From Octopus sinensis (taxonomy: Eukaryota): 64,000 bases of DNA. The notes below the pieces were generated by a model. That model had not been told where the DNA came from. It was given only the letters and a program-made list of their open reading frames with translations, and ran no database searches. The position numbers and the translations under genes were made by a program. How positions within the stretch are numbered: position 1 is the stretch's first letter; each line of letters opens with the position of its first letter. Of this stretch, positions 20,943-64,000 are shown one piece after another. The stretch is from assembly GCF_006345805.1 (NCBI RefSeq), contig NC_043000.1:123256001-123320000 (forward strand), in the 5' to 3' direction.

Positions 20943-21163
20943 GTAAGTGATACAATTCTTTTTAAATATATGTTTGTCTTATTGTCCATATATATATAAA
21001 AAAAAGTTCATATATTTTTCATTTTTACCATATAAGTAATAAGTCTCTATGTATATATACATACACATATGTACGTAAAAATAACATGATGTGGATGTAT
21101 GTATATCTATATATATGCTATTATATATGTATATGTATTATATATACATATATTGTACATATC

Positions 21164-21206
<43 letters not shown>

Positions 21207-21249
21207 CACATATATATATTATACATGCATACATATATATGTGTGTGTA

Positions 21250-21295
<46 letters not shown>

Positions 21296-22756
21296 AATTG
21301 TTCCGTTTAACAGAATTTCAAATAGCCCCGGAACTATCAGTATTAAATTATAGTTAGTAGAATATTATATCCACTTATGTGCATTTTCTTGCATAAACAT
21401 CCATATTCATTTGCGCATATATATTTGTATTGTAAAATTCATTTTAGTAGAAATAGAAATATGCATATGTATCTAAATATAAAAATAATTCAGGTTATGA
21501 TATGGAAATTTTATCCTCGTAGTAAAGTGATTTGCTCATTTCTACTTCTAATTATTAAAAACATTTGAGAAAGGAAAACTTAAAATAATAATCAAGATTA
21601 ATTTAGTATAAACTAATATATTAATATTTTCATTTTAGTTTTCTGTGAGAATACAAATTTTAAATGCAAATTTAATAGTGTAGTGTTCAATTTGAAATCC
21701 TATTACATTAAAAGAAATTATTACACATCTTTGTTTTATATGCAACTGATTAAAATTTTTCAATGTTTAGTTGTGTCCATTGTGTAATTTTACTTGTCAC
21801 ACTTGTCTGATGAGAAATAAGAAATAGAACATTTATATGATATTTTATTGTTGGTTCTAGAAACAATTGCTTGTTAGTTTCTTAATTGTTTATTTAATAA
21901 TAATTGATATTTAATTTTCAATAAGATTTTCATAATGGTATATAGAAAATTAAATAACTAATTTATTAAAATATATTTACAACAGGTATAAGATTTGCAT
22001 TTACCTGTATATGTTACATATCTATTTAGATTTATTTTGTTGTGAATAGCATTTTAGAATAGTTTATCTGGTTTTTGTAACTATAGATTCTGTCAGTCAA
22101 AGAAATCAAAATGTTCTATCTTTAGAATTTGTATTGATTAGACACAAGCTAAGAATTTGGTTTTAAACAATTTCAATATTTCTTATGAAAGTAATAGTAT
22201 ACTACTGATTGTTTCCTTTGTATATCTCTTTACTTTCCAAAAATGCTTATTTTAATTTCATAAAGTCTTTTCAAAAATTTTATATTTAACAATTAAGCAT
22301 GTTATCTAAAGATTCAACTTTAACATAAATCATTGGCTATGTAGTAACTGATTAGAATATACCGATCATTTATTAGTTCCACTAATTCTACAAATGCTAA
22401 CTAATAAATGTATTTTGCTGCTGCCTCTATTCAAATTAAGAAAAAGTTTAGAACAACTCTCTGCCCAGCTGCTATTTGCAGTACTTTGAATAATACATTG
22501 ATTTTAAATGCAAGAGATCACTTGTATTTGTATGTATCATATTTCAAAAAGTACTAAAATGCATAAACAAATATATACATATGTTTTTGTATTGATGTAT
22601 AAATATATATATATGTGTGCACTTACAAACATATGCATATATTTGTCTGTGCATTTCAGTATTGCTTGCAATTTGGGACATGCACACATAGATATATATA
22701 TATATATGCTCCAGCATGGCTACAGCTTTTAGCTAAAACTAATAAAAGATATATAT

Positions 22757-22838
<82 letters not shown>

Positions 22839-23068
22839 AAACATATATCTGTGTTATATATATATAACTATAAATATGAGATAAATTTGATGTACTTAGC
22901 TTACAAATGTAAATATATCTTGTTATTCTCTTCATACACTGAAAAATAAAGATTATCCTGACATACTTCATGGCTAATTAGTAACCTGTTAGGAAGTAAA
23001 TAAACTGCATTCCTCTGCCTTTGAAGACAATTAAATAGTATATATTATTTAAATAAGATATAAAATTG

Positions 23069-23265
23069 AGGTGGCAAGCTGGCAGAATCATTAGCACACC
23101 AGGCAAAATGCTCATATTCTGAGTTCAAATTCCACCAAGGTCAACTTTACCTTTCATCCTTTCAGGTACTTAATAAAGTAAGTACCAGTTGAGAACTGGG
23201 GTCAATGTAATTGACTTACCCAACTCCCCAAACTTGCTGGCCTTGTGCCAAAATTTGAGACCAAA
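23069..23265 (+). mobile_element. tRNA-derived SINE, second family; other copies at about 11456-11650(+) and 54298-54490(+)
   Basis: A-box-like ggcaagctggcagaatc and B-box-like gagttcaaattcc; shared body cctttcatcctttc...aagtaccagtt...ctggggtc...ccttgtgcc in all three copies. Confidence 0.85.
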
Positions 23266-23925
23266 TAAAACACAAACCTAGAAGTAGCTGAAAGGGCTGA
23301 TTTAATTTGCATATTGTGCATTTCTTGACTGTGTAATTAATTAATTAATTAATATTTTATTCACATACAATGTGCATTAGAAATTCTATATAAAATTGAT
23401 ATAGTTGTTCAACTATTTGTAATGTGTTAAGCTGGAAAAAAAAAAAAGCAAGTGCTCTAGCATAGGCACAGTTAAATGACTGAAACATGTAAAAGAATAA
23501 ATGTAAATACATCTTGATATTCCATCCATACAGAGAAAAATAAAAGAGGTATTCTTACATACTTAATAGTTAATTAGCTACTCCCCAGAGGTAAATTAAC
23601 CCCACTCATCTGTCTAGAAAGAGGACTGAATATTAAATGCTACTTAAATCAAACACAAACAATAATGTGCAATAAACAGCTTGACTAATTCTCATAGTAT
23701 GAATTTGTTAGTGGCATGATAATTAATGAAAAATTAATTAATCATGCTACTGACAAATACACAATAGTCAAGCTGTTTCAGCTACTTCCTATTAACACTG
23801 TTTAAATCAAATATTTAACTTCCTTGTATATGTTTGATTTAAATAGCATTTTCTATTTAGTTCTCTTCACAGACAGGGTGACTGAGAGGTATTTATTCTC
23901 TGAGGAGTGTTCTATAAACTAAAGG

Positions 23926-24265
23926 GTAAAGACCCCCTTCGGTTATGAGTGACCATGGGTTTGCACCTAGAGAGTTACCCTCTGAGGCACAAGTCTGGGC
24001 AAGGTTGTTTTATGGAAGACCAGTAGTCGCCCATGCATACCGGCCTCCCCTCTCCACGCCACCAGTGTTATCCAAGGGAAAGACAAAGGTCGATACAGCT
24101 TGGCACCTGTGACGTCGCAACTCATTTCTACAGCTGAGTTAACTGGAGCAACGTGAAATAAAGTGTCTTGCTCAAGAACACAACACGCAGCCCGGTCCGG
24201 GATTCGAGCTCACAACCTCACGATCGTAAACTCGATGCTCTAACCACTGAGCCATGCACCTTCAC
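23926..24265 (-). mobile_element. Young tRNA-derived SINE, third family; related decayed copy at about 31440-31700(-)
   Basis: Minus strand begins gtgaaggtgcatggctcagtggttagagc...gagctcgaatccc (Pol III A/B boxes) followed by tgtgttcttgagcaagacactttatttcac; GC-rich and CpG-retaining. Confidence 0.85.
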
Positions 24266-24274
24266 TTAACTATC

Positions 24275-24305
<31 letters not shown>

Positions 24306-24388
24306 ATAAACATACATATACATATGTGTGTGTATATATGCATATATAGTTATATATTTATATATATATGAACATACATATTCATATA

Positions 24389-24426
<38 letters not shown>

Positions 24427-24498
24427 CATAGACACACATGTATATATATATATACATAGACACACATGTATATATGTACATATATATATGTATACATG

Positions 24499-24541
<43 letters not shown>

Positions 24542-25194
24542 TACATAAATAGACTGGCACAGAGAAGTAAGCATAGTATTAGAAATGTTTTCAACAAAAT
24601 CTAGATTGAGATGATAGTATGGAATATTTGAGAAAATGTTATAATTTTACTGTATTGTCTTCATGTGTAAAATAATATAACCAGGTTGAAGCCAAAATTT
24701 GTAGCTTGGTTTTAATCATAATATAACAAATATAGTATAAATTATATATATCTTAAAATTAAGAGTCATTTCAAGATGTTACACTTTTCCTGTGACTATT
24801 ACATTTAGTATGAAATTATAAACACTCTTTTAGGTTTTAAATGAATTTATGCCTGGGTATACCTAATATACTTAGTTAAGTCATTTTTTATTAATGAATT
24901 TCACAGCTTAGTAAGAACCTTAAAACATTTGATTTGTAGTTTCTGGTATATTTCTTTGATCTTGTTATTTTTTATTCAACCTATATTTTTTCATTCTAAA
25001 GATTTCTATGATTTTCAGTTTTGTTGTACTAGTTAAAGTCATTTTTCATAAATGTTAATCAGTCTGTTGAATCTTTTATTAGAAAGTTGGATCTTTAATT
25101 TAACTTGATTGATTTTATTTGTTTGATTTTATTTTGATTTTATTTTTTGTTTAATTAATAGAATTAACATATTGGTTCTTTTATACTCTCCTAG

Positions 25195-25215
25195 GGGGAT
25201 TAATTTGTTTTGTAG
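25195..25215 (+). CDS. Candidate 21-nt microexon (GGLICFV)
   Basis: ttaac branch-like motif, ttcttttatactctcctAG acceptor, TAG|GTATAT donor (moderate); 3n, stop-free. Confidence 0.35.
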
Positions 25216-28200
25216 GTATATCAGATTTTCTTTATGTTTTGAGGAAAGTTGCATTCTCTCAACCGATATTCTTCAGATTACTCCCATTAATACTTTTATA
25301 GCCAATATTTATTAAAACTAACAACTAAATTTAAACTATCCAGCTTCCTTATAACATTTGTCTTGAGCATTGTTATTGCTTTCTTCTAAAAAAACAATAG
25401 TTTAATGTTTTGAAAATTATTAATGTGTTTTATCTTAATAGAAACTTCAATTTTAAGAAGAAATATGTTTAGCAGGAAATAATTGTATTTTAATTATATT
25501 TCAACTTACTAAGATATATTATGGTATCTCTTGGACAGCCAAGTTATATTTTCTCACCTGAATGTTAAAAACAATAATTTCCAGTTACTCTGACTTAAGT
25601 CTTCCTTCCTTATTTGTTCATGTTTTCTCAACTTCTTTCTAAATTCCTTTAAACTCCAGTAGCTGTATGACTATCTCCCAAATTGTATTGAAGTTATTTA
25701 TTTATTTCAACTAAACTTTTTCTGAAATCATCATCCATAGTAACTTCAATGCCTCCAGCATTTCTCAATTCTCTCATTCCTCCCAAATTGTTTGTTACCC
25801 TGAATTGTCTGCAGCAGTTATTTTCCTCACCTACCCATAACTCAAACCAACTTTCCAAACACTCTTGCCTTCTATCTCATCTCTAAACTCAACTATCTAC
25901 ATATCTTCCCTTGTTGGATCATCTGATTATCCCGTCAAGTTGACCAGTTTACATAATCCTATTCTGCAACTAATCTGTCTGGTACTTCAACTCTCAGTTC
26001 TATACTGTTTCAACATCAGGTCTAACATCAAATCTATACTGACTTCTCTTGAGAGCAATGTACTTCACTTCTGATTCACCTAAAACATAGCTTTAGTACT
26101 TCACTTTTGACCCATCCAAAACAGAATATAGCATTGCATATTGTCCTTGAGCAAAGCTTTCAGCTGTGTCTGACACAAGAATCTTAGAGTAATGCTGCTT
26201 GATTATGGGATCTTTCCATTCATCTCTTAAACATGAAGTCTCTGTTAGACCACTCTATTTCAGCTTGCATTGAGAAGAATCATTTCTGTTCAGCCCGAGA
26301 TTCTCCTTGTTACTTATAATCTCTCTCTCTCTGTCTCCCTCCCTCCTCTCTCTCTCTCTTTCTCCCAGGTGATGCCCCCACTTCGCTCTTCTTTAACTTT
26401 CTGCATGTAGGTGTTGTCATGCAGCTTAGATATCTCACAACAAACTTGATCTACTTTCATGAACAGAAACCTGTAAGTATGCACCAGTAACTGCCTTGTT
26501 TACACCCTTTTGTGTGAACACAAGAATAGTAAAGTCACAACAAATGTAAGGCTTCAAAGCCTCTTCTGACTTGTTATGGCAGCTTTACATAAAGAACATA
26601 GGTGAAATTAAATTAAAAAGACCAGTTTTTTTTCTTTCAGGGCTAGAAAATACTTCTTTGATCAATTACTGGCCTTCTAAAGCTCGGGTATGATTCACAT
26701 TGATGTACTGCTCACATTTCTATGACAGTACTGCTGCTATAAACTCCATTCCAAAATTGGTTATCTGACTGATAAGTAAAGATTCATCCAACACTATGCT
26801 ACATTCACTAGCCCAAATATACATTATTTCTTCACTCACTTCCTCCTTCACAATTACTAACACTAACTTTTACTCCTCTAAACCAGTAAGCTAGATACTA
26901 CCTCCTCCCAAGCTCATCTATTTCACTTGGCTCTCATCTCTTCTTGTCATCATCCCTACTGTGTATTACTCAGCAAATTCCAAATTTAACAATCTAGAAC
27001 TGCAGCTCACTAGCATTGCCTTCTTGACTATGTTTTTCCTATGAGTATAAATCTACAGAAGTTCGAGTTTTTCATTATCAACACATCTTAACCAGTATGA
27101 GATTACTTACATAGGTCATTGATGCTACTCTTCTTTCGACTAATTTATAATAATGAAAGTAAACGTTTTTAAGTATAACCATTAAAGATTGTTAATAAAA
27201 AGCCTGAATTCTCTTTGTTAAATATTTACAACCTTCAAACAAATGATATTATTAATTTTAACAATAAGAATTCATTTTCATTCAATTAGTCTTGTAATGC
27301 TATCTTAGTTATGATTGATATTATTTTTGTTGTTTCTTACTCATTTTTCTTTAAATAGTTATTTCTGAAGTATTAGTAAAGGAATAATGGCATTCACTTC
27401 TTATTTCTGTTGTGTATTAGCATGATTTTACTACATTCAACTGAAACTTTTCTCGTTTTATATAACATTTACATTAAAATAATTATTTTTTCTAAAATAT
27501 CTTGGTTAGAAAGTATATTTGGTACTATCATTAAAGCCATTTAAACATTATGAATAATGCTATTAAAAGTAATACTTTTAGAAACTCACTTATAATACAT
27601 AATTCTTATAGGTAATCTTTAATAATCTACATTAGTTAAATACTATTGATGACATTTTGAGGAACTTTCAAAAGCAATTCTTCTTTATAAAATTAAACAT
27701 TATTTTAAACATGGCTAGTTTATAATAAAAGCATTGAAAAAAGATCATTAAATTTGTATTGTTACTCTATCATAGTTGCTCATAGATTCCATAGCAATAC
27801 CTTTACTGAAAATTTCCAGAAAGTTTTATTGTCTGTATAAGATGCTATCATAAATTGATATAGCTCTTTAAAAAAAAAATCTCTGAAAGGTCTTTGAATT
27901 ATAACAAAATGAAAAAATAGGAAACACTCAGTATTTTTCAAATATTCGAATTCTTTCTAAACTTCTTATCTTCCAAATTATGTACTGATGTAATATTACC
28001 AACTTTTTAAACCTAAAATTTAACTCTTTCTTTATTTCACTAAATAATGTTAATCAATGTATTAATTTAATTTTGTAACAATGAACATTTTGCATATTTT
28101 TGTTATTTTGTTATTTAAACCATTCTCTGACATAATTCTATCCTAAAATCTTAATTCTTATGTACTTTTGGAAAATTAATTTATTCTTACAATCTTGAAA

Positions 28201-28614
28201 AATGATTAGATTTTGTATATAAAATGCCAGTTTTAATTATGTAGCATTTTTAATTTAGAATAAATAATACTTTAAAAAATGCTATTATCTCTGAATGAAA
28301 TTTTACAGTGAGCTTGTTGATAAATCTAGTCTTAAGGTGATTGAAAACTGAATTTAATCATATATTGTCAGTTCTGTTCAGATAGTAGCACACCAGGATA
28401 GAATTATATTAAACTGATTTTTGTTCCTATTATTACCCTCTGCAATGTGCTTGCAGTCTATGTAAAATGTTTGATGCACATATCCATTATTGTAACATTC
28501 TATAATGATTACATCATACAAAAAAATGAGCCAAAAATGTAAAAGCGAAAACAGACACTATTTAGACATTTTCTATTCATATATGCTAATTTGTGTGTGC
28601 ATATATCTATATAT

Positions 28615-28650
<36 letters not shown>

Positions 28651-30136
28651 GAAGAAGAAGAAGATATATATATATATGCATTGATTTATTTGTGTTTTAT
28701 TGATTATTTTCTCTGTTTTTGTAAAGAAAAGTTTATATTTGAAAATATAAAAAAAGAAAAATAAATTCAGATAAACAGGTATATTTTCATAAAATTTTAA
28801 GGTTTTTGTATTGTTAGTGATGTGTTTTATGTATTTTTTAAACTTTGCTCGGCTGATATCTATTTTTTATTAAAGACATGAAAAATTTAAAAATAAAAAA
28901 GAAATACACTATAGAGAAAGACACAAGTATAATAGTTAATTATCAAGTTTTATCAATTATATTCTTCAAACTATTACTTTGAATGCATATTTTATTGCTT
29001 AATAATAAACTGTATACCTCATATTTAATAGTGATAAAACATGTCATCTTGCAACAATGAACTAGCCATGTTTAATATCACCATCAACATTCATTAGCAT
29101 AAGATATATCAATAGCACAAGTAGAAATAAAAGGGAATCTCTTTAATGTTACATCAACCTTAAGACTAAATAACTTTTAGATATGAGAACTAGAAGACAC
29201 TTTTAGTGTTTTTAAAGTTTTAGAGTTAATACCCACCTAATGAGAACAGAAAATTTGCTTTTATTGATTGAGTTTTTTATTTCTAAACATGAAAAATTAT
29301 GTATCTTCTCTCAAAGCAGAGAAATAAAATAGTGCAAGTGATATTATATTTGACTGCAAAGTCTACAACCAACATCTGTACTATTTAATACAAACAAAAT
29401 GTAGGAAATGTTACCTAGAATATGTAAGTCAATGACTTTTGTTACAAATTTAATATTTCACTAAAATTAGTTGTTTTCTGATTCATACAGAGTTCAGATG
29501 CATTTTTATTAATGTAACACTATTTATTAATTTTATGAAATATTTTAGAGCAATGCTTAATCAGATTAGATTTTTAAATTTTTTTGTTTGTTTTTATTGG
29601 AATTTAAAACGATGCCTGAGCAAATAACATTTACATTTAAATAAATGTACAAACACAAATACTTCAGATTATAACAATTTTTCTTTTCCTTTATAATAAT
29701 GTAAATTAGACAAAAATATATTTCAAAATAATAATTTCTCTAAATATAAACTGTAAACAGTTGTTTGAGCATATACATATGTGCAAAGATACACAGACAC
29801 ACACATACATATATACATATATAATTATATATATATGTATATATGTGTATAAATATATATTAGTTGTATATATTCCTAATATATACATTATTTTATATAT
29901 ACATTATATATTAGTTGTGTATATTCCTAAATCAGAAAAATCAGGTGCTTGTATATTAGGTAACAGAGTGGGAATATTTTTCTTTTATGCAGTATTATAA
30001 ATTTAGTCTCAAACCAGCCAATTCATATTCCCAAAAGATTTTGTGTTAAAGAATACTCCAAGTGTGGAAGGGTAATTTAATACTCACCAAGCATCATACA
30101 ATATACTCTCTCATTCTTTAACTTGAATTTTTTCAG

Positions 30137-30160
30137 TAACAAGAACTGGCCATTATGAGG
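30137..30160 (+). CDS. Candidate 24-nt neurexin SS4 microexon (VTRTGHYE)
   Basis: tactctctcattctttaacttgaattttttcAG acceptor, AGG|GTAACT donor; 3n, stop-free in phase 1, ends in G. Confidence 0.6.
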
Positions 30161-32663
30161 GTAACTTTCTAATATAACTTTCTAATACTGTATAAATGAT
30201 ACATATATATATATATATGTATATGTATATATATATATTTATACATTCACACACTTACATATATACATATGCACACAGGACATATATTTCATTAGTTTTT
30301 ACACCCAATTTTCTATGCTGGCATGGTTTGAACAAAGCTTATTGAGATAGTTTTTGTATGGCCTGTTGCTTTCCTGTTATCAACATTTAAAGAGTTCTCT
30401 CAATGCTGCATTTTCTGTGCTTAATTTGCCAGTGAACTGGATGCTTTTTCATGGCATTGGCTCCATTGAGACTGTCTTGCTAGTTAGAGTTCTCACAACT
30501 GAAACAGAGGAAAGAAGACAGGGCAATAACTTTAGCTTTGGAGTTAAGAGAATTTAAGTTATGGATGGGAAGAACAGGTTTAATTTTGTGAGAAGGTGCC
30601 AATAGAGAAGGTAACAGAGATGAGGAAAGCTTGGGAATGGCAAAGAGAAGGAGTAGTATCAGGAGTTAGTGAAATTGAGAGAGGAAGAGCAAGGTAAGGC
30701 TGATGGGCTATGAGAGTAGGCTCAGTGGAGGACTGTATGAGTGAGAGAGAGAGAGATATGAAAGTGAAAAGGGAGCTGAAGAAACTACAAGGAGAGTCAC
30801 TAAAAACAGAGATGCTGGGTACTATCAGAGGGAGATGAGAGAGTAAATGGACAGTATTGGGGCAATGAAGAATTTATAGAAAGAGGACAGGGACCACAAA
30901 AGAAATAAGGCCTGGAGTTGGAACAGTAGATGAATGCAGCAAAAGCAGTGAGAAAAAAGGTAGGAAGGTAGATCAGAGATGGAGGGGTGAATAAAAAATT
31001 GATATAGTAACGGTTATAGATTCCTTTCTACCTTCCTTGCACAAGTCCAGTTCATCTTCATTATGACAAGTCACAAATTGTTGTGATGTTTGTTATTTCC
31101 TCTGTGAGGTTCAGCAACTTCAGATCGGTTTTTCTCCATTTTGTCCCATGTCTTTCTAAGTCTTCTCTTTGTTCATATTGAGTGTTTGATACTTCTTTTA
31201 TGTTACTGTTGTCATCAATATGCATTGTATATCCATACATTAGTCTTCTCTCTTGCATATTACATTTGATTCTTATATACAGATTTTTTCTCAGGTCAAT
31301 TATACTCTGATTCATGCATACTAACATTACACATGCAGTAAACCATGCTCACTTTATTTCTATCTAGTCTTTGCAAATACTGTGCATATATATGTGTATA
31401 TATATATACAAGCAAACTAGATGTTAAGTATAAATAGCATTCCATCAGTTATCCATCTGATTCAATCAGTGGAACAGCCTGCTCTTCAAACTAATGTTTG
31501 AATGGCTGAGCACTCCACAGACAGGCATACTCTTAATGTAGTTCCCAGGGAGACTCAGTATGACACAGAATGTGACAAAGCTGGCCCTTTAAAATACATG
31601 TACTACTAATTTTTGCCAGCTGAATGGACTGAAGCATCATGAAATATAGTGGTGTGTTCCTCAGAGACACAACACACCACCAGGTCATGCACCTTCACTT
31701 ACATATATATGTATATATATATATATAATTATTATTATTATTATTATTATTATTATTTTTATTACAATCATTATTATTATTTCACTTAGGTATAGAAATA
31801 CTACATAACTTAGTGACAGAACTCAATATTCATATGTTTCAGAACAAAGCATCAATCAAGTATAGAGCAGTAATAAGACATTAAAATGAAGGAATGAGGA
31901 ATTGTCATGAACTTCATTAGTTTACATTTTCCAGATAAAATTGTACATGTTTGAAGCTCCACTGATGCTATAGAATGATACACAAGTATTCAACTATGAG
32001 TGCATTGCATCTTATTGCAAAACAGCTGCAATCTAATGCAGTTCATGACATAATCCCTTATTCCATTTTCATTTTCTTTTCATATATATGTATATATATA
32101 GTCATAGACATTACTTCTCAAGCACATGGTTTTGAGTGCAGTCCCACTGTGCACTACCTTGAGCAAGTGTCTACTATGATAGTCATGAGTGATCAAAGTA
32201 CTAACAGTGTGTGTGTGAGAGAGCGAAAGAGAGAGAGTGTTTTCATATATTGTTCATTTTTTAAATTTCATTATTCCATGTTATCATTGGTTATTATTAT
32301 TAGCATTGTTTTATTGCTGGATACCCTTCCTGTCACTAACATTTACCTGTTTTTGAAAGGAATCTCCTCATATGTCAGACATTTTCAAAGATGTTGACAA
32401 AGAAATGACATTGTCACTAGTTGTAGCTCACAGTATTCAGAGAATATGTAAAGACACAAACAGATACATGTGCATGAACATGCACACACATACACATACA
32501 TGAATATGATGGGCATCTTTCAGTTCCCATCTACCAAATACATATGATTTTGGCTGACTCAAGCTATAGCAGAGGGCACTTGACCAAGGTGTCATGTAAG
32601 GGAACTGGACCTACAACCAAATAGTTTGGAAACAAACTTTTTAACAAACTAACCAACCTGTAT

Positions 32664-32738
<75 letters not shown>

Positions 32739-32741
<3 letters not shown>

Positions 32742-51452: not shown

Positions 51453-51806
51453 ATTACTTCTTCTGTCATCTCTCTCTCTATCCTCTATTTACTTCCCTTA
51501 GTCACAAGGCTTTGAATGAATGGAGATGCAAAAGGGGTGAAAGCGCCATTACTCAAAGTCATGCAACCTCTTGTGTTGATGCCATGATAAAAGGACACAG
51601 TAAACTCTGTAAAGTGGTTAACATTAGGAAGAGCATCCAGCCATAGAAACTATATCAAAGTTGGCTCTTTGACTTGACTAGGAGAGTAATAACTGGTTTG
51701 GACCTTGATAACATATCCAATCCATGTCAGCATGGAAAGCAGACATAACTGCTGGTGATGATGCTGATAATATATATGTATATATATATGAAAATACGTG
51801 TGTGTG

Positions 51807-51843
<37 letters not shown>

Positions 51844-52539: not shown

Positions 52540-52623
<84 letters not shown>

Positions 52624-52641
52624 CATACATATATATATATA

Positions 52642-52678
<37 letters not shown>

Positions 52679-53587: not shown

Positions 53588-53627
<40 letters not shown>

Positions 53628-54029
53628 GTTGCTACTGGTACGCTAATACCACTACTCTTACCTATTCCAGTATCATAAAGACACTAGTATTCCCATCAAT
53701 TTTAGCAGTAGTGCCACCATTTTTAGTGGCAAGTAAAACCTAGTTCAATGCGCCTTCTTTAAACATAGAATTCTAAACCAGAGACCATAACAAGAAGATA
53801 TCAGAGTAATCTGTGGGATTAATCCTTGGTTGATGTCTCACTGTTGGGACCATTTCAATATAAATATCCTTACATTTTATTTAAATAAATAGTATAGTTA
53901 TTTATTTATTATCTATTCATTTATTTATTTATTTATTTATTGTACATTTTCATTGCATTCATTGTGAAGATCCTGCCATTTTGTAATAATCATCCATTTG
54001 ATAATAAAGAACTCATTAATATTATCATC

Positions 54030-54225
54030 ATTTGTAGTAGTGATGGTGGTGGTGGTGGTAGTAGTAGTAGTAGTAACACCATCATTCTCATTATTACTAT
54101 TATTATTATTATTATTATTACTATTATTATTATCATTATTATTATTACTATTATTATTATTATTATTATCATTATTATTATTGTTATTATTATTACTACT
54201 ACTACTACTATTATTATTATTATTA

Positions 54226-54262
<37 letters not shown>

Positions 54263-54298
54263 TACTACTACTACTATTATTATTATTATTATTATTAT
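54030..54298. repeat. Compound (GGT)(AGT)(ATT)(ACT) trinucleotide array; also (AAT)n 50478-50565, (TAC)n 53588-53630, (CT)n 7097-7182, (AGAT)n 10758-10821, (CA)n 51387-51450
   Basis: Direct reading. Confidence 0.97.
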
Positions 54299-56590
54299 AG
54301 AATGCTGGGCGAGATGCTTAGCAACATTTCCTCCGTCTTTATATTGTGAGTTCAAATTCCACTGCGGTCAGCTCTACCTTTCATCCTTTTGGGGTTGATA
54401 AATTAAGTACCAGTTGAGTACTGGGGTCGATGTCATTGACTTATCTCTCCCCTCAAATTCCCAGCCTTGTGCCTATAGTAAAAAGGATTATTATTATCAT
54501 TATCATTATTATTATTATTATCATTATTATTATTATTATTGTGCTTTTGTTTCCTAAATATACATATTTCTAAAAAGTAAAATCATTACAGATTAATTGA
54601 TATCATTTCCTACAGAAACTTCAAACCTTATATCACTTTCTCAGTTCAACTTAGACTCAATTTTGTGTAGTCCTGAGATTTAAGATCAGACACTTCTTAC
54701 TAATCAAGTAACATGCTACATACCCTGAAATACTGTTTTAGATACAGAATAGCATAGTTTGTAGTAATTAATTATATTAATGGAAAGCAACAAGACACAG
54801 CATGTCAGTTTTATACAAATATTTTTCTAAATAAGGGACCATTCTGAATATGTACATCACTTAACTCTGAATGAATTAGAATGAATAGCTTCAAGCAGAA
54901 TTGCTTGTTTCACTGGTAAAGTGTAGAGGATTGAAGAGTACTCATGTACAATAAATATCTTGTAGGTTGAGTAGAGTAGCAGTACCAATAATCTTTTCGG
55001 TATTGATCACTACTTTTTCTAGATTTTTATGTGAGGATGATAACAAACTGAGTTCATAAAAAGCAACTCCAACACACAGTGATAAAATGCCTTTCTTCAA
55101 CCTATCATTACTAAATTTGATACTCTTTAACTTCCAGAGGATATTAAGACATGTCGAGCTTTTTCACAATCAAGAAAGGCTGTCTGAAATAAAGCTGTTT
55201 GACACCTTTGTACTGGATTTTAATGAGGTTATACTTTCCTCTGTGCTTTCTCTAGTCAAATTTTATCATTGGCAATTCTTAACGTTTATGTCTATGTTGT
55301 TGTTATATCATATCTTTAAAGTGATTGGTGTTACATAACCATTTCACTAGTTACAAGCAATAGCAATCTCCAATAGTTAGGCAACTGTCATTGCATGAAA
55401 CATTACTACAAGCCTCACAACTGCAATCTAAAATATTACACTGAGTTTTTACATTCCTCTTAAACAACATTTTTCTCATCATAGTTATACAAATGACAGA
55501 ATAAATTGGATTTATTTGGCTAGCTTTGGTTAATATGATAAAGCTGACTTTTTATTTTTGTTTAATAAATCAAGTATTTGCAGTATGCACCACAAAATGG
55601 TTTTAAGCCCTCAGGAAACCAAGTCTACTCTGCAGGGCTGATTACAAGCTATTTCATATTTTATTTGTAGCTTGAATCATCAACTCAAGAAAGTTGCACT
55701 CAGTCAAGCTAAATAGTTCATTCCACATTATAGGGGAAACAAAGATTTTAATATTACCCTATTAACAGTTACAGAAGGAAGATAGTAAATATATCTATAA
55801 AGACCTTTTTTTTAACTAAGAAAGGCTAATGTATTCACATTCAATAATTTGAAGATGCTCAAAATTTTTTCTTAGGTGTCAATAGATTACTTGACTTAGT
55901 TACTGAAATCGAATTTCTCTACATTTAGAAAAGTTGTTATAGTGATTATTTCATATTCTAAAAGTTTGATGATGTTGAGAAAAACAATTTTGTGTTTTCA
56001 ATTTTAAAAATGTATGGTAAATACTGGAAAAACAATTAATTCTAATAATGTTAAAATTCACATAGATTACAATAAGTTACTGTTTCAATGTGATGATAAA
56101 TTGTTCACTGACTAGATTTTCTTTTTATTCATTTATTATAGTTTATTTTATTTTAGTATACTATTGAACTTAAACAATTTTATTTTCATTTTGTCATAGG
56201 GATTGTTACCTACATTGTTCTTTAGAGCTCAATCATTATTATAGTTTTAGCTAGACAATTAGTTCTACAAAAATTTTGGAATAAGCCTATGATTTCATCT
56301 TCAGGAGCTTTCTTTCATAGATGCAGAAAGTTATAAAATATGAAAAAAAAAATCATGATATACTTCTATATCTCTGAGCTAATTTTACCATCAAATGCAC
56401 TGTCTCAAAAACAATATCAAATATAATGTCTTTCGTTGTTGCTGTCACTGTTTATTATTCTCGATAGAAAAATGCTCATGTCACCAAGTTTTCATGCTTT
56501 GTCTTGCCACCTCATGAACTTGCATGCCAGTTTCCTTGCTTTGGTTTATTCATTTAATTTTCTTTTTCATCTTTTCACCTTTTCTGGAAG

Positions 56591-56656
56591 ATCTCCTCCC
56601 TTTTATATTGAACTTAACTGTGGAAAACGTCAACAGTATTTTTTACAATTCAGAAG
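56591..56656 (+). CDS. Candidate 66-nt cassette exon (DLLPFILNLTVENVNSIFYNSE)
   Basis: Long pyrimidine tract with upstream TGCATG (56521) and TGC motifs; non-optimal gaAG acceptor; AAG|GTAGCA donor; 3n, 22 codons open in phase 1. Confidence 0.35.
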
Positions 56657-58292
56657 GTAGCAAAATTAATCTATAATTATACCTTTTTAAAACTTAAGAC
56701 TACTTTTCTAAAGTTTAGAGTATTTATCTTCAAAATAAAAATAACTGTTTTGAATTTAAATACCATTATCATAAAACAGCATATTCTATGATTAGGTTTC
56801 AGTACTAGGGCAGTGAGGAAAAATATTTAAAGAATTACATTTTTTTCCCAGCTAAAAACATTTGTCTTCACATAGAAATTATTCCTCAACATTTCCAAAG
56901 TAAAAATATAAAAATGTCATTGCTACTGACAGCATTCTCTGCTTAGATCCTGTAAATAAGTATATATTGCTTTCCTAACATTTCTACATTTTCTGAAATA
57001 TTCTCAAAAGTAACAATAAACTTTCTGAAATTGTAATTTATTTACTATTACAATTCTAAGATGCTAACAGAAATTAGTTTTGCTTATAAAGTTATCTTTA
57101 CTCATCTATCTTCAATCAAAATTTACATTCAAATATGTTATTACTTCATTCTTAGCTAAGCAAATAATTGAATAATAATATAACACTTACATTATGGCCA
57201 TACTAATTAGACAAAACAGATTCTATTTTCTGCTCTATAAACGTTATTTCTAAAAAATTTTTACACAAATGCATTCATTATACATTATCACATCATCATT
57301 GTCATTATGATTGTTATCATTATCTACAACAATAGCAAATACAACATTTTTACATCTATTTTTCCATGCTTGCATGGGGTGGATGGGTCATCAAGGACTG
57401 AGTCTATTCATATTTGCAGTTATAGCTCTTTTTAGGTAGTTTGGGGATGATATCTTGCTCATATGTACTCTTTTTGCTATATTTTCTATGATTGGATGTC
57501 TTTCTTATTACCAACTACTTTACAGAGTGCACTGGGGATAATTTTTGTGACAGTAGTACTAGATTGTTTGTAATATTCTCAGTAAAAGTAAGAAGTTAGG
57601 TCTACCCTACATTATCACCATTCATTCACAGAATGTACAAGATATGTTTTATCATGCCACCATCTCTAGAAGGATTGCTTTGCCCCAGGGAAGAAGTCTC
57701 TCTACCCTATATTATCTTCATTCATTCACCAGTATCAGAGGTTTGCCTCATTCCTGACCAATAGAAGAGAGAATGATGAAAGCAGACAAGAATGAGAAGG
57801 TAAAGAAAGAGAGAGTAATGAAAGACAAGGGTGCTAGGGAGAGAGTGGTTGAGGAGAAAGTAAAAGAAGAGAGAGATAGAAAGAATAATAAACATGATAA
57901 GATTTTCACTAGAAACAGCATGAGTGCTGGCTGTGATGTTGAAAGAGTGGGGAATAAAAAGGAAATAGAATTATAGAAGGAGAGAAAGAGAGAGAATTAT
58001 GGATGTCAACAAAGAGTGAGAATGAGAGTGATGGATGTCAGTAATTTGTGATAGAAGGGATAGTAATGGAGAAGAGTGAGTGCAGTAAAGAAGTGATGGT
58101 GTGTGGAAGATTGAATACAGACAGATCCAATATCTTGTTACACAGGTAGAATGATAGAATGAAAGTAATGTGTGTGTGTGTGTGTGCATACATACACATT
58201 TTAAAAGAATATAAAAGTATATTTTGTATACTATAAAAGTGAAGAAAATAATGAATTTACTAGCAGCTCTTTTAATTAAATCTTTATCACAG

Positions 58293-58331
58293 TCCTTTTA
58301 CATTACTTCTTTATAATCTCAAAAGAAAATG
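58293..58331 (+). CDS. Candidate 39-nt cassette exon (VLLHYFFIISKEN), or 6-nt form 58326-58331 (EN)
   Basis: Consensus donor ATG|GTGAGT; both upstream AGs (tctttatcacAG 58291-92 and aaaAG 58324-25) give 3n, stop-free phase-1 exons. Confidence 0.5.
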
Positions 58332-58859
58332 GTGAGTAATAATGAGTGTTGTAAGAAAATTATTTCAGTATTTATTTTCTCTTACTTTACTTCTTCAGAA
58401 AAGTATTAATTTATTTATTCAATTCTTCAAATAACCCTACCATGATAGTTTAAAGTTTTCCTGGGAAAATATATTTTTGGTGGGAATATTGATGCTGTTG
58501 CATTGTTTCTCTTTTTTTTTGTAATTATTGGTGCATGGATGTTGCTTTATTCTACTGTTTTGTTATATTTATTGTAAAACTTTGTTGTTGCTCTTTAGTG
58601 AATTGTGTTATATGTTTGTGCTACGTTTGGTGTTTGTAATAGCATGCTACAACATTAGATTGCACTAAAAAAATAATACTGAAATTTCAAAAAGCTAATT
58701 TAGTGGTTTAGTTTAGTTTTCTTCTGTAATTTAAAAAGAATCCCCAAATAATTACATGAAAGCAAAGAAAGAATATGCTAACTCTGAAATAACATTACTT
58801 AATGCCAATAATTTGTGTATAAATTAGATCCAAAAAGAATTAAAGCATTAATCTAAGCC

Positions 58860-59830
58860 TCTTGATCTAAGGACTCATCTCTGATCAGAAAAGCAGAGGC
58901 AGGTGTAAAGCATGTACAAGTATTGTAAAACTTAAAGGGTTTATGGGTTATATAAGAAGGGCTGAGAGAGGACACCCAAAAATTATCAGTCTTTAGATCA
59001 AAGGATTGCACAGTTTGAGAATAATATGTATTAGTAACAAAGGGCACAGAAACAATTACATTGGATAAGTTCATTGAAGATTGATTGAAACTGTCAAGCT
59101 CTAAATAGCAAAGTACATTACAATAGTGACATAAGACACAGACAGCTTCTTTGCCACCATGAGGTGTAACAAGAGCGAAAGCTTTGAAGGGAAGGTTAAT
59201 AAAGTAGATTGTTTTCCTTTTGATGTTGTCAGTGCTAGAAGGCAGTGCACTATCTCTGATATGAAAACAGCACTCCATATTGAGGGATATTTAAGCCTTG
59301 TGAGGAACCAAAACATAGTTGTTTTTTTACTTGTAAAGGATCGAAATCATTTGAATCTAGTTGAGAATATGAAATTTCCAGGAGAAACCTCTATAGATTA
59401 TATTAACCCTAATATGTGTTAATCAGGAGAAATAAGGATGTTTAAGGCAGTTTTCTTCCCTGGATATGACACAACTTCAGATAGAATTATTGATAGAAAG
59501 TGTAGATAATTACAGCATTGAGAGAATCAGATATAGAAGTACAAAGTCACAGGGAATAGCATTTACATATGAATAAATGGTGTGATTTGATAATTGGAAA
59601 AAGTTTACCGATATAGAAGTAAAGGTCAGATTAAATACTGACACTTGAGGAACCTTTAACTGATGGTACATCATTTACACAAATAGATATGATATAGTCA
59701 AGGAAGAAATCCCTAAAGCATTTAATTACATAGAGGAATATATTTGGTAGATACACCATTATCATTAGAATGTTTTACACCAAGAGAAAGAAAGAGACAA
59801 GTAGAAAGAATGAGAGAAATTCAAGTAGCC
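58860..59830 (-). mobile_element. Highly decayed LINE (APE/RT region, L2/CR1-like); similar old remnants near 25560-27130, 30380-31080, 35830-36110, 57770-58170
   Basis: Purine/pyrimidine-skewed, higher-complexity blocks with broken frames; HGG..AV motif reminiscent of APE endonuclease. Classification tentative. Confidence 0.4.
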
Positions 59831-61980
59831 CTTTTCAGATGGCTGTTAAATATGTTTTCCTAGATGTATATTCAAACGTTTAGAGTGCAGTTAACAGGAT
59901 GATAGTTATTTTCCAGAATTTAGTCTCTCTTCATATAGTCATATTTCAAAATAGCGTTCTGTTTCACCCTTCAACTAACCAGTTAAATAAAACCAGTACC
60001 AATTATATATTGAATTCACCATTATTAAAAACTGTCTCACTCAAGGAATTATTTATTTTAATTTGGAAGATTATATGCAAGTCTAAGTATATCAGCTCAT
60101 AGCACATATGAAATTGTTTCACAAATGAATACATTTGATTAATTAACGACCCTTTCACATATTGGTTATCCACAAGAACCATGAGCAGCTGAAAAAAATA
60201 TTACAATAACAAAAAAATTCCAAAGAATAGCAGCATGCACATACAGCAAAAGAAAATACTTTACACAGTCAAAATATTGAAAATCAAGAAACTTTAATTC
60301 AGAAACCTAAGTGGAACTCTGCTTTCTTATATCAGTTTCATATTTTATCCTAATACGTAATTTTTGATATTTAACATTCTATTAAAGATGAAAAAGATGA
60401 CCTTGAGAGACATTAAATTTAGAAATGTATTTTTATTCTCAGAATTTATTAATGAACTTCTATACAGTATATAATTCATACACACGCATGCGTGCACACA
60501 CACACACATATGCACACACACACACACACAAACACATGCACACATGCATGTATACATGCATACATACATACATACGTACATGCATAACATGATGGCTGCA
60601 ATGCAATGATGAACAGCACAGATGTGGCCTTTTAATCTTGCTAGGGATCTACACTCTTTTACACAGATGTAGCAACAAAAGATGACTCTTACAACTACCA
60701 CACACACAACATATGCCTTCATTCTATCATGGAATTTTCATTGAGTGTTTTTACTTTTTCAAGCTAATGCCAACTATATTGAGATAGATGTTAATAAACA
60801 TGTTAAAAATCAAGTGATGCCTATACCTGAAGTTTTTTTAAATGAGGAAAGGCCTTACACAGGACTAGTCCCATTCTGAACAATGCATGCAATTGCCCCA
60901 AAAGAAGAACTAGTTTACATAAGTGAATGCAAAGAAAGTCACAAGTGTTACATCAGAGTTTTCCTAAAACTAAGAGAAATGTCTAAGCAGAGATTGCGGC
61001 TCTCTCTCACTCCCAGCTATGAGATGGCAGTCGACTCCACTGAATTCTCTGCCCTTTGACAGTTTTTTTTTCTTCTGCTGGGTGACCAACAAAAACCATC
61101 TTCCTTACCAAGCAGGGTAACTGGTTTAGTGACCAAAGGCCTGGTCATGCAGCAAGTTGTACTGGGTTACATGTTACCAGTAGCACTGAGAGTGACCCAA
61201 CATATATTGATACATATATATAGGCACATATACATATAAAGTAAGAAAGAGAAAGATAGATAGATAGACAAAAACCAGATGGACAGACAGTTAAATAGAT
61301 GCATGCATATGTACATTTACAGCCTATTTTTATAAGTGTGTGTGTATGAATTAGCATCATTAATTCATATTTTCACTTCAGTTAAGTTTTCTATAAGGTA
61401 TTAAAGCAGAATAAATTATACATATTCTTTAAAGTCCTCCTCAATTTATAGTCAAGGCACTTATAAATACTGCATCAATCATCTCCCTTCCTATTCTAGT
61501 GAACTGTAGCAATTATTTTATAGCAAACACAGTCACAGCTATATTCTCCAACAGTGAGTCATAATTATATGATTTTACTTTGGTATTTAGATTTAGTATT
61601 TCTCATGTATTTCACACTTTCACTCGCTTCCTGAAATATTTTTATTTATAATCAATGACAAAGTAATTTTAAAAATTTATCATAAATCAAACTAGCAAAT
61701 ATTTTTCTCCCCCCTTTCCTTCTATTTTTTTCTTTTTACACTTTGAAATATGCTATTAATCATTTCTTTCTAAAAATACAAAATTCATTTTATTCTATTG
61801 TTCTTTGATATATTTGGGAAAAAAATATTTAACAAGCATTCGGTCTCCAAAACCTCCAAAATTTTTAGATATACTGCAGATAATTATAGGCCTGATAGAA
61901 GTTCCTATTTTCCAACTTAATTAGTAAAATAAGTGCCAAATTACTGCTAATAAATTTGTTTATAAATTATGATATATATA

Positions 61981-62023
<43 letters not shown>

Positions 62024-64000
62024 ATATTATAATTATATATAGCTTCTGTTCAAACAAATTTACACTATTTAGCACTTTCATTAATTTAAAAAGGATTTTT
62101 CCTTATGTCTTCATATAACTATTTTGAAATGTTATTTAACATCAATCATTCAATTTATATAGTGAAAAATAAATTTAAAATTCATTTCTTCTTAAAAATA
62201 CTTCTAAAAGCTTAATATTGTTTTGTGCTTGTTTTTTTTTTATTTTTTGTAATTGTAGAATATAGATAGAACCATAAATTATTAACTATATAATCTGCAT
62301 TTATAAAACACATGTCCATTACACAGTCATATACGCACATACATATACATTGAAATTTAATAAACAGAATATATATTCTTTACATGCACATAATCTTAAA
62401 TCTTATTTGCCATCAATTCTATCCCAGCTCTATAGTTGTTATTAACATCCTATGGAACATTCAAAAGATAGTTATTCATATGATGAATTGATCCTATCTT
62501 GCCAAAATCTTCTGGGCCTGGTTTATCTTTTTGTTGTGTTTATTGTATCTCTTTTAACATATCACCATACACTTTACTCTCCCAATTGCACATCTCTCTC
62601 TTTCTCTCTCTCTCAGTTACACACACACACACACACGAGTTCTTAATTCTGAGTGCTGTGCTATTACCAATGTATACCCTCTGAACAATAAACTCTTCAG
62701 AATTTCATATAGACTAAACTAAGATCATTTATTTCATTTTCTCTCTAAGGTGAAGTAGATAAGCTGAGAAATATTCCTCTATTAGAGATATAAGAATTAA
62801 AAAATGTATTTCTTTAGTCAATATAGCTGTAGATAAATAATGTCATGTTGACATAATTAGCATTGGAAAGGGCTTCTAATTTGTTTTAGTAGTGCAAGTA
62901 GGTACATGAATTTAAAAGCTTATTCAACATGGACTAATAAAACAGAGTGAAAAGAAATTTATCTGAACTTTGCTTAATATAAATGATCTCTCAAATGACA
63001 TTATCACAATTATTAAGATGTGATATAGCATTCTTCATTAAGACAGAAGTTCTATTTTCAACAGCAAACTATCATTACCCAAACTTTGTAATAAGTCCAG
63101 GAACAAAAACACTAATTCTTGATAAAGACTTAAGCATTATGAATCAATCTCTTGGATGCAAAGTTTGATGAAGATATTTTAGAAATATTACATTCTTCTC
63201 TTAAGTGTGCATCTTTTTATTTTCCAAGTAACAGGGCTTCAATGTAATTACCATCACTGAATAACATTTGATTACTTGAATATGAGCCATTATATCAATT
63301 TTTATGATAAGCAAAGTATGCCATTGCAAAAAGAACTCTATTCCTGTTTGTTGTTTATCACGTATTGTATAGATACCACATAACAGAATCAGAAGTACTG
63401 CCACTATGAAGAGAAAAAGCACACTTCTAGTGAAAACTTGCAATTTTTTCAATTTGAATATCTAATTAAACCATACAAAGTACAGAGAAACAAACATACT
63501 TTATTTTAAAATACAATAATAAACAGATTATAGTTACATATTCTAAATAGGAATTATTAAAACAAATTATCTATTTTTAATATTTTTCATGCAACCTAAA
63601 TTTGTTTAATTTTATGAAAGGAAAGTTTCACAAATATATTGTATGTGTATATTATAAATCTACTTTATCAATTAAAAATTATATGCTACATATTTTTTTC
63701 TTAAATTGCAATTACTACATATCAAAATTATATCATTCAGCCATTTCAATATCAAATACACTTTTGAAGTGTGTGTGTGTGTGTGTAATTAATAGGTGTA
63801 CAACTATCTCAACTAAAAGAAAGAGAATAATATTTGTTAACTAAGAATTTTGTTATAGGAAATGGAAATTGAGAAACCTTGTACTGTAGGATTTTTTTGA
63901 AATGGAATTTGTATTAATTTAGCTTACACATCTGTAAAATAAGAATCCACATAATACCCTACCACAAAAAGTGATAACTGTATTTTATTAATTCACACAC

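What the first reader, a model, noticed from the sequence alone, without database searches (positions are those of the whole stretch)
20943..64000. Putative combinatorial microexon array at the SS4-equivalent site of a cephalopod-like neurexin
Seen: the LNS6 exon ends KHPD-G| in phase 1. In the following 43 kb I find no constitutive continuation exon. Instead there are several short segments with a polypyrimidine tract + AG, length 3n, no stop in phase 1 and a terminal G before a GT donor: 24 nt (30137), 18 nt (41629), 36 nt (42963), 39/6 nt (58293), and more weakly 21, 6, 15, 66 and 15 nt (25195, 43564, 50011, 56591, 23534). Established: vertebrate neurexins have one 90-nt SS4 cassette at this position that tunes binding to neuroligins, LRRTMs and cerebellins. 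Inference: this lineage may have replaced the binary switch with multiple independent cassettes. Four cassettes would give up to 16 LNS6 variants and nine up to 512; the spacing (565 nt or more) does not force mutual exclusion. The peptides do not resemble vertebrate SS4, implying independent origin. Caveat: the scan was by eye, and AT-rich DNA yields chance AG..GT pairs.
Basis: partly seen in the sequence, partly recalled or inferred. Interest (0 to 1): 0.9.

Follow-up and report, generated by a model that had tools for sequence, protein, structure and literature searches.

The report
Conserved octopus neurexin SS4 microexon
In the long intron after the sixth LNS-domain exon of an octopus neurexin gene, one of the nine proposed mini-exons (36 bases) is a real alternative exon that is nearly unchanged in a cuttlefish-like relative and combines with a second cassette lying beyond the window; the other eight have no support and look like chance.

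Summary
The window is part of the octopus alpha-neurexin gene. The LNS6 exon does end at 20942 in phase 1, exactly at the vertebrate SS4 position, and no continuation exon lies in the next 43 kb.

All nine listed segments exist as described, but such AG..GT pairs are no commoner than on control strands or in other length classes.

One is real. The 36-nt segment 42963-42998 encodes VSSWYIGEILDP. This is the exact insert in RefSeq neurexin isoforms of Octopus sinensis and O. bimaculoides.

The exon sits in a 121-nt island that is 85% identical in a decapodiform contig, while the surrounding intron does not align. It also carries a neural-microexon-like 3' splice region.

A second cassette (EEFGPMHVFPS, 30 or 27 nt) lies outside the window. 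The isoform models show neither, A, B, a shortened B, and A+B, so use is combinatorial.

The other eight candidates appear in no isoform seen and show no conservation.

A nemertean neurexin carries a similar insert (VFSWLLDDEVQLT) at the same site. This hints that the cassette may be older than vertebrates.

The parts
16558..16739 (+). Constitutive neurexin exon, first part of LNS6 (ESTTYHFGPNPG...DDYLEAEL)
   Evidence: 100% identical to O. bimaculoides neurexin residues 1092-1152 by tblastn. Flanked by ...ttag and gtaaga. About 80% nucleotide identity to the decapodiform contig.
20771..20942 (+). Constitutive neurexin exon, second part of LNS6, ending in phase 1 (KHPD + G) at the SS4-equivalent site
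   Evidence: 82% nucleotide and 98% amino-acid identity to the decapodiform orthologue. The PDB alignment breaks here, between ...ERYP and GRQLTIF of neurexin-1.
20943..42962 (+). Intron between the LNS6 exon and cassette A (22 kb). AT-rich, with microsatellites and a LINE fragment.
Evidence: No neurexin-like coding segment.
42901..43020 (+). Conserved island around cassette A: polypyrimidine tract, UGC motifs, exon and the first ~22 nt of the downstream intron
   Evidence: 85% identity over 121 nt to the decapodiform contig, E 1e-30, colinear. It is by far the strongest of only three sequence-specific matches in the intron.
42963..42998 (+).
   Evidence: Peptide present in RefSeq O. sinensis X1/X6/X7 and O. 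bimaculoides X1/X2/X3/X6/X7, absent from X5 of both species and from the B-only forms (O. bimaculoides X4; O. sinensis X2, X3). 33/36 nt identical in the decapodiform, with AG and GTAAA kept and no synonymous change. Three UGC motifs within 20 nt of the 3' splice site, a 73-nt AG-exclusion zone and 82% pyrimidines.
42999..64000 (+). Continuing intron. Cassette B and the next constitutive exon lie beyond the window end.
   Evidence: EEFGPMHVFP and EQMSIFNNQ are not found in any frame. Candidates at 43564, 50011, 56591 and 58293 are not conserved in the portion of the decapodiform intron available.
28355..28399 (.). Sharply bounded 45-nt conserved intronic element of unknown role
   Evidence: 89% identity, E 1.5e-9, colinear with the decapodiform intron. 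No exon shape kept in both species, no hairpin, and no pairing with cassette A above shuffles. No Rfam match.
48776..48830 (.). Weaker conserved intronic element downstream of cassette A
   Evidence: 76% identity over 55 nt, E 4e-4, colinear. It starts just after a 3'ss-like AG and holds GTATGT/GTAAGT 5-8 nt later in both species. Not 3n.
32801..34446 (+). LINE-type retrotransposon fragment inside the intron, which explains the GC-rich stretch at 32-36 kb
   Evidence: ORF 32801-33382 matches RVT_1 at E 3.7e-13. GC is 0.41-0.44 there.

Best explanation
**What it is.** The window covers part of the single octopus alpha-neurexin gene: the two exons of LNS6, followed by more than 43 kb of the intron at the SS4-equivalent position. 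That intron holds one genuine alternative cassette in the window. Cassette A (42963-42998, 36 nt, phase 1-1) inserts VSSWYIGEILDP between Asp and Gly in the surface loop of LNS6, where vertebrates insert their 30-residue SS4 peptide.

**How the cassettes combine.** A second, unrelated cassette B (EEFGPMHVFPS, 30 nt, or 27 nt through an alternative acceptor) lies further downstream, outside the window. The two are included independently, giving at least five LNS6 variants.

**Shown:**
- exon identity, position and phase;
- presence or absence of A and B in annotated isoforms of two octopus species;
- strong, exon-centred conservation of A in a decapodiform.

**Inferred:**
- Inclusion is neuron-regulated, plausibly by the Srrm234/eMIC microexon machinery. 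The 3' splice region has UGC motifs, a long pyrimidine tract and a long AG-exclusion zone.
- The inserts change which postsynaptic ligands LNS6 binds, as SS4 does in vertebrates.

The other eight listed segments are chance AG..GT pairs in AT-rich intron.
For: - **Exon end and phase:**
- **No continuation exon in the window:**
- **Isoform evidence:** RefSeq proteins of O. sinensis and O. bimaculoides differ at exactly this point by nothing, VSSWYIGEILDP, EEFGPMHVFPS, EFGPMHVFPS, or both cassettes.
- **Cassette A location:** its peptide is encoded at 42965-42997.
- **Conservation:** the orthologous decapodiform contig has the same exon 12.8 kb after its LNS6 exon. It is 33/36 nt identical, both splice sites are kept, and it sits in a 121-nt island at E 1e-30. 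The remaining ~19 kb of intron gives otherwise only two short islands.
- **Substitution pattern:** there are no synonymous substitutions in A, against 82% nucleotide identity in the constitutive exon.
- **Splice-region features:** UGC motifs, AG-exclusion zone and pyrimidine tract match the published eMIC-exon features (PMC8797185).
- **Position in the protein:** PDB sequence and fold comparisons place the insert at the SS4 gap of neurexin-1 LNS6.
- **Other candidates:** none scores above the random-intron null in the decapodiform, none is in any isoform, and none has UGC motifs.
Against: - The transcript evidence is indirect. It consists of RefSeq model proteins, not reads or junction counts.
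- All decapodiform full-length ORFs seen (five Logan transcripts) and the Argonauta model are skip forms. Inclusion of A outside Octopus is therefore inferred from DNA conservation alone.
- Cassette B could not be examined, because it lies outside the window and outside the decapodiform contig.
- The AlphaFold model gives the insert only pLDDT 55-61, so nothing can be said about its conformation.
- Regulation by Srrm234 and the effect on ligand binding are untested.
- The decapodiform contig ends 6.8 kb after cassette A, so candidates at 50011, 56591 and 58293 were tested against incomplete sequence.
Confidence: 0.8

Rival explanations
1. One reading: the intron holds an array of four to nine independent microexons, giving 16-512 LNS6 variants.
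For: All nine segments have the stated splice-like shape. At intermediate thresholds the sense strand has more 3n, phase-1-open pairs than the reverse strand or shuffles: 11 against 3, shuffle mean 3.7. Annotation pipelines often miss microexons.
Against: - All 7 O. bimaculoides and 6 of 7 O. sinensis RefSeq isoforms were seen, and they show only cassettes A and B.
- None of the other eight is conserved in the decapodiform, whereas A is.
- The excess vanishes against the reverse strand at loose thresholds (24 against 21). The bias toward 3n is the same on both strands.
- The 15-nt candidate at 23534 lies in an intra-window repeat.
Confidence: 0.05
2. One or two of the other candidates (most plausibly the 24-nt exon at 30137 or the 18-nt exon at 41629) are real but octopus-specific and unannotated microexons, in addition to A and B.
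For: With A and the 21-nt candidate at 25195 they belong to the four best splice-like pairs in the scan (pyrimidines >=15/20, donor >=6/8). No reverse-strand pair reaches that level. Very short exons are hard to annotate.
Against: They have no conservation, no UGC motifs and shorter AG-exclusion zones (32-43 nt) than A. They are absent from all isoform models.
Confidence: 0.12
3. Cassette A is annotation noise or an occasional cryptic exon with no function.
For: The only transcript-level evidence in hand is model proteins. The decapodiform and Argonauta sequences seen lack the insert.
Against: The exon and its splice sites are 92% identical between octopodiform and decapodiform lineages, inside an intron that otherwise does not align. 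There is no synonymous change and the reading frame is kept. The same insert is modelled independently in two octopus species.
Confidence: 0.03

Closest known systems
Vertebrate neurexin splice site 4 (SS4), the 90-nt cassette in LNS6
   Same: Same intron position and phase: a Gly codon split after its first base, between ...YP(A/S)G and RQLTIF. Cassette inclusion or skipping lengthens the same surface loop of the same domain.
   Different: There are two short cassettes (36 and 30/27 nt) used independently, instead of one 90-nt cassette. The peptides are not detectably homologous to the 30-residue insert (shuffle p 0.19-0.38 for A). The regulators (KHDRBS family in vertebrates) and the ligands affected are unknown. 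LRRTMs and cerebellins are reported to be absent outside vertebrates (PMC10084454).
Srrm234/eMIC-dependent neuronal microexons
   Same: [quoted passage not shown] It has conserved flanking intron and sits in a synaptic adhesion gene (features as listed in PMC8797185).
   Different: At 36 nt it is above the strict limit of <=27-30 nt. Neural specificity and Srrm dependence were not tested.
LAR-RPTP (PTPRD/S/F) meA/meB mini-exons
   Same: Several tiny independent cassettes in a presynaptic adhesion receptor are proposed to act as a combinatorial ligand-binding code (PMC10883964 abstract).
   Different: A different gene and fold (Ig domains). There the cassettes sit at separate sites, whereas here two lie in tandem within one intron.
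Nemertean (Lineus longissimus) neurexin SS4-site insert
   Same: RefSeq isoforms with and without a 13-residue insert VFSWLLDDEVQLT at the same site. It starts with Val and has V-x-S-W at the same cassette positions as octopus A.
   Different: Only model proteins were seen and the DNA could not be fetched (gene range 366 kb). The similarity is short (shuffle p 0.06-0.10).
Dscam1 / clustered protocadherin exon arrays
   Same: Neuronal surface-receptor diversity generated from one locus.
   Different: There is no array of paralogous exons: A and B are unrelated. There is no mutual exclusion, since A+B isoforms exist. Only two cassettes are documented.

Membership tests
Neurexin (alpha-neurexin), LNS6 domain | Laminin-G/LNS fold with neurexin-type sequence | tested here: met
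   PDB phmmer gives neurexin-1 alpha at E 8e-70. The AlphaFold model has pLDDT 91, and Foldseek top hits are neurexin beta/LNS6 with TM 0.95 and rmsd 1.5 A. Pfam PF02210 is recorded on homologues.
Neurexin (alpha-neurexin), LNS6 domain | Orthology to annotated cephalopod neurexin | tested here: met
   Both window exons are 100% identical to O. bimaculoides XP_052823473.1, residues 1092-1208.
Neurexin SS4 alternative splicing | Alternative segment inserted at the LNS6 loop between ...P-x-G and (R/x)Q-x-x-x-F-N, at a phase-1 intron | tested here: met
   The exon boundary at this point is also seen in many invertebrate genomic gene calls.
Neurexin SS4 alternative splicing | Both inclusion and skipping occur in transcripts | tested here: inconclusive
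   Shown only through RefSeq model isoforms of two species. No reads or junction counts are available with these tools.
Neurexin SS4 alternative splicing | Cassette homologous to the vertebrate 30-residue insert | tested here: inconclusive
   Octopus A against vertebrate inserts gives p 0.19-0.38. Lineus against NRXN1 gives p 0.03 (VFSWLLD against VDDWLLD).
Neurexin SS4 alternative splicing | Single binary 90-nt cassette | tested here: not met
   There are two cassettes of 36 and 30/27 nt, and A+B isoforms exist.
Neurexin SS4 alternative splicing | Insert changes binding to postsynaptic ligands | not testable with these tools
   Needs binding assays. The insert is modelled only at pLDDT 55-61.
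eMIC/Srrm234-dependent neural microexon | UGC motifs near the 3' splice site, long pyrimidine tract, long AG-exclusion zone | tested here: met
   UGC at -17, -13 and -5, an AG-exclusion zone of 73 nt and 82% pyrimidines. Two UGC motifs and the tract are kept in the decapodiform. None of the other candidates or the constitutive exons has UGC there.
eMIC/Srrm234-dependent neural microexon | Neural-specific inclusion that depends on Srrm234 | not testable with these tools
   Needs tissue RNA-seq and perturbation.
Mutually exclusive / paralogous exon array (Dscam-like) | Tandem paralogous alternative exons, one chosen per transcript | tested here: not met
   A and B share no similarity and occur together. 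No other conserved exon-like island was found.

The most novel reading that the evidence does not exclude
The SS4 alternative exon may not be a vertebrate invention. Three cassettes would descend from one ancestral bilaterian microexon in this phase-1 intron: coleoid cassette A (VSSWYIGEILDP), the nemertean cassette (VFSWLLDDEVQLT) and the 3' part of the vertebrate SS4 exon (...VVDEWLLDK). Cephalopods would then have added a second cassette (B) to it.
Probability: 0.25. Interest if true: 0.8.

Novelty: new variant of a known kind. Interest (0 to 1): 0.6.

Why it matters
A 2025 review still states that extensive neurexin alternative splicing appears exclusive to vertebrates (PMC12665717). A transcriptome-wide study concluded that octopus splicing does not depart from that of other invertebrates (PMC9699675).

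Here the functionally best-studied vertebrate site, SS4, turns out to be alternatively spliced in coleoid cephalopods as well. It uses two independent microexons, and one of them has been held almost unchanged since octopuses and cuttlefish or squid diverged.

Octopus RefSeq isoforms also vary at three other places: a 9-residue LNS2 insert, EGF3, and an 80-residue stalk segment.

This gives a concrete, testable case of either convergent or very ancient tuning of a synaptic recognition surface in the other lineage with large brains.

The isoforms themselves already sit in RefSeq. New here are the link to SS4, the conservation, the splice-site signature and the nemertean parallel. I found no paper describing any of these.

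Tried and rejected
- **Short-fragment protein search.** Searching the exon alone returned only read-through gene calls on genomic contigs, not spliced transcripts.
- **Junction query.** A 125-residue query across the junction, including A and B, found no cephalopod fragments.
- **Next constitutive exon and cassette B.** Neither was found in the window or in the decapodiform contig, even after extending it to its end. Two weak tblastn hits for B there are not exons.
- **Weak hit at 59225-59311.** RRQCTISDMKTALHIEGY against RRQLTIFNS...VGG (E 0.2-0.8) was rejected. The real octopus continuation is EQMSIFNNQAYIYIGG and is absent from the window.
- **Long-range RNA pairing.** Pairing between the conserved 45-nt element and cassette A, in the manner of Dscam docking, is no better than shuffles (z 0.2-0.3). 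No hairpin was found and there is no Rfam family in the window.
- **Single-sequence AlphaFold run.** It was useless (pLDDT 37). The MSA run is good for the core but not for the insert.
- **Lineus gene DNA.** It could not be fetched.
- **Second cluster listing.** It showed the same 15 members, so O. sinensis isoform X4 and ten minor cluster members were not seen.
- **Dinucleotide shuffles as a null.** They under-count splice-like pairs, because real intron has clustered pyrimidine tracts. The reverse strand and the other length classes were used instead.
Full report
**Check of the observation**

The sequence at 20771-20942 follows ...ttttcag. It reads [57 protein letters not shown] plus one extra G before gtaagt, so the exon ends in phase 1. 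A second exon at 16558-16739 encodes the start of the same domain. Both are 100% identical to residues 1092-1208 of Octopus bimaculoides neurexin.

A sequence search of solved structures gives neurexin-1 alpha at E 8e-70. The alignment breaks exactly between ...ERYP and GRQLTIF, which is the SS4 site.

All nine listed segments are at the stated coordinates with AG, GT, length 3n, an open phase-1 frame and a terminal G. The exception is the '6 nt' alternative at 58293, which is followed by 'ta'.

No continuation exon is present in 20943-64000. This holds for tblastn with the downstream LNS6 part of about 30 neurexins and for exact searches with the octopus continuation EQMSIFNNQAYIYIGGKK.

**Chance expectation**

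The 43-kb intron holds about 10,400 AG..GT pairs of 6-90 nt. Those that are 3n and open in phase 1 (1564) are as frequent as the 3n+1 and 3n+2 classes (1569 and 1582), and close to the reverse strand (1425).

With thresholds just loose enough to include all nine candidates, the sense strand has 24 such pairs and the reverse strand 21. Both strands show the same bias toward 3n. Tighter thresholds give 11 against 3, or 4 against 0. These numbers are small and partly reflect the T-rich sense strand. The list as a whole is therefore what AT-rich intron gives by chance.

**What is really there**

A search of 1.8 billion representative proteins with the exon, followed by a region-restricted search with a Haliotis neurexin, retrieved cephalopod neurexins. 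The 90%-identity cluster of Octopus sinensis XP_029634772.1 holds the RefSeq isoforms of O. sinensis and O. bimaculoides. At the point where the window exon ends, they read as follows:

| SS4 form | Sequence at the junction | Isoforms |
|---|---|---|
| Skip | KHPD-G-EQMSIF | X5 of both species; O. vulgaris |
| Cassette A | KHPD-VSSWYIGEILDP-G-EQMSIF | O. sinensis X1/X6/X7; O. bimaculoides X3 |
| Cassette B | KHPD-EEFGPMHVFPS-EQMSIF | O. sinensis X2; O. bimaculoides X4 |
| Shortened B | KHPD-EFGPMHVFPS-EQMSIF | O. sinensis X3 |
| A + B | both cassettes in tandem | O. bimaculoides X1/X2/X6/X7 |

None of the other eight peptides occurs in any isoform. All seven O. bimaculoides isoforms and six of the seven O. 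sinensis isoforms were seen.

**Conservation**

One short hit (P0001) came from a 39.9-kb contig (ENA ERZ21867824 ctg83661l). Its LNS5 exon is 96% identical to Acanthosepion (Sepia) pharaonis NRXN, so it is a decapodiform. I read the contig to its end in three pieces. Introns do not align between the two species; upstream of the SS4 site only the two LNS6 exons match.

Across the SS4 intron, apart from low-complexity repeat matches, three colinear islands stand out:

| Window position | Length | Identity | E-value |
|---|---|---|---|
| 42901-43020 | 121 nt | 85% | 1e-30 |
| 28355-28399 | 45 nt | 89% | 1.5e-9 |
| 48776-48830 | 55 nt | 76% | 4e-4 |

The first island is cassette A with its splice sites. 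The decapodiform exon (L002:4009-4044, minus strand) lies 12.8 kb after its LNS6 exon. It is 33/36 nt identical and encodes VSSWYIGKIINP, and both the CCCAG acceptor and the GTAAA donor are kept. All three differences are non-synonymous and there is no synonymous change. The constitutive exon, by comparison, is only 82% identical at nucleotide level. This pattern is typical of regulated alternative exons.

Local alignment of each other candidate (exon plus or minus 25 nt) against the decapodiform intron scores within the random-intron null, whereas cassette A exceeds every null draw. One caveat applies: the contig ends 6.8 kb after cassette A, so the three most distal candidates were tested against incomplete sequence.

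**Splice-site anatomy**

Cassette A has UGC at -17, -13 and -5 from the acceptor. It also has a 73-nt AG-exclusion zone and 82% pyrimidines over 40 nt. The decapodiform keeps two UGC motifs and the tract. Neither the constitutive exons nor any other candidate has UGC within 30 nt.

Long AG-exclusion zones, UGC close to the 3' splice site and long pyrimidine tracts are the published signature of Srrm234/eMIC-dependent neuronal microexons in flies and mammals (PMC8797185). This is a motif-level resemblance only; dependence was not tested.

**Protein context**

An AlphaFold model of LNS6 with A+B, built from a 34-sequence alignment, has pLDDT 91. It superposes on neurexin-beta structures with TM 0.95 and rmsd 1.5 A. 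The insert (residues 117-140) reaches only pLDDT 55-61, so I draw no conclusion about its shape. By position it lengthens the same loop as vertebrate SS4. That it retunes ligand binding is an inference by analogy.

**Comparative picture**

No SS4-site insert is seen in any RefSeq isoform examined of the following taxa:
- three Haliotis species, Patella, Pomacea and Babylonia;
- Mercenaria and Ruditapes;
- spiders, locusts and mayflies.

The nemertean Lineus longissimus is an exception. Isoforms X1, X3 and X4 carry VFSWLLDDEVQLT where X2 has nothing. This insert shares V-x-S-W at the same cassette positions with octopus A, and it shares WLLD with the end of vertebrate NRXN1 SS4 (...VVDDWLLDK).

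Composition-preserving shuffles give p 0.06-0.10 for octopus against Lineus and 0.03 for Lineus against NRXN1. Octopus against vertebrate is not significant. I treat deep homology as a lead, not a finding.

Two arthropod proteins also show odd inserts at this point: P0023, which resembles a beetle neurexin, and the Ranatra (water bug) protein P0245. Either may be a model artefact.

**Literature**

I found no paper on cephalopod or other invertebrate SS4 splicing. A 2025 review repeats that extensive neurexin splicing appears exclusive to vertebrates. A 2022 octopus transcriptome study found no global departure in splicing from other invertebrates.

Octopus RefSeq isoforms also differ at a 9-residue LNS2 insert, at EGF3 and at an 80-residue stalk segment.

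**Verdict**

There is a combinatorial SS4 module in coleoid neurexin, but it has two documented cassettes rather than four to nine. One of them is in this window, and the remaining candidates are unsupported.

It is a new variant of a known kind. The isoforms are already in RefSeq as models, but I found no paper describing them or linking them to SS4.

Noticed in passing
window 28355-28399: A sharply bounded 45-nt intronic element, 89% identical and colinear in the decapodiform intron (E 1.5e-9). It is not exon-shaped in both species, forms no hairpin, does not pair with cassette A and has no Rfam match. It could be a splicing or transcriptional regulatory element.
   Followed up: partly
window 48776-48830: A 55-nt element, 76% identical (E 4e-4) and colinear downstream of cassette A. 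In both species a 3'ss-like AG is followed 5-8 nt later by GTATGT/GTAAGT. This is reminiscent of a decoy or recursive splice site, and it is not 3n.
   Followed up: partly
window 32801-34446 (+) and 9564-10364 (-): LINE-type retrotransposon fragments. The first has an RVT_1 domain at E 4e-13. They explain the GC-rich stretch at 32-36 kb. SINE-like repeats at 34521-35143 and 44634-45283 resemble each other.
   Followed up: partly
proteins P0351/P0349/P0352 vs P0183 (Lineus longissimus): Nemertean neurexin isoforms with and without a 13-residue insert VFSWLLDDEVQLT at the SS4 site. It resembles octopus cassette A (V-x-S-W) and the end of vertebrate SS4 (WLLD).
   Followed up: partly
octopus RefSeq isoforms (outside the window): Besides SS4, the isoforms differ by a 9-residue insert LAKDRGLFV in LNS2, by skipping of EGF3 (40 residues, just upstream of the window) and by an 80-residue stalk segment. 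Octopus neurexin therefore has at least four alternatively spliced regions in the models.
   Followed up: partly
window 42963-42998 vs L002:4009-4044(-): Cassette A has no synonymous differences between octopus and decapodiform. All 3 changes alter the residue, and the neighbouring constitutive exon is only 82% identical at nucleotide level. This suggests constraint on the RNA as well as on the peptide.
   Followed up: yes
protein P0314 (metaclust, octopus): An older octopus gene model continues after KHPD with EYYIHLLMCIF... This looks like a mis-called terminal exon in AT-rich intron, and shows how easily spurious exons are called here.
   Followed up: no
   Followed up: yes
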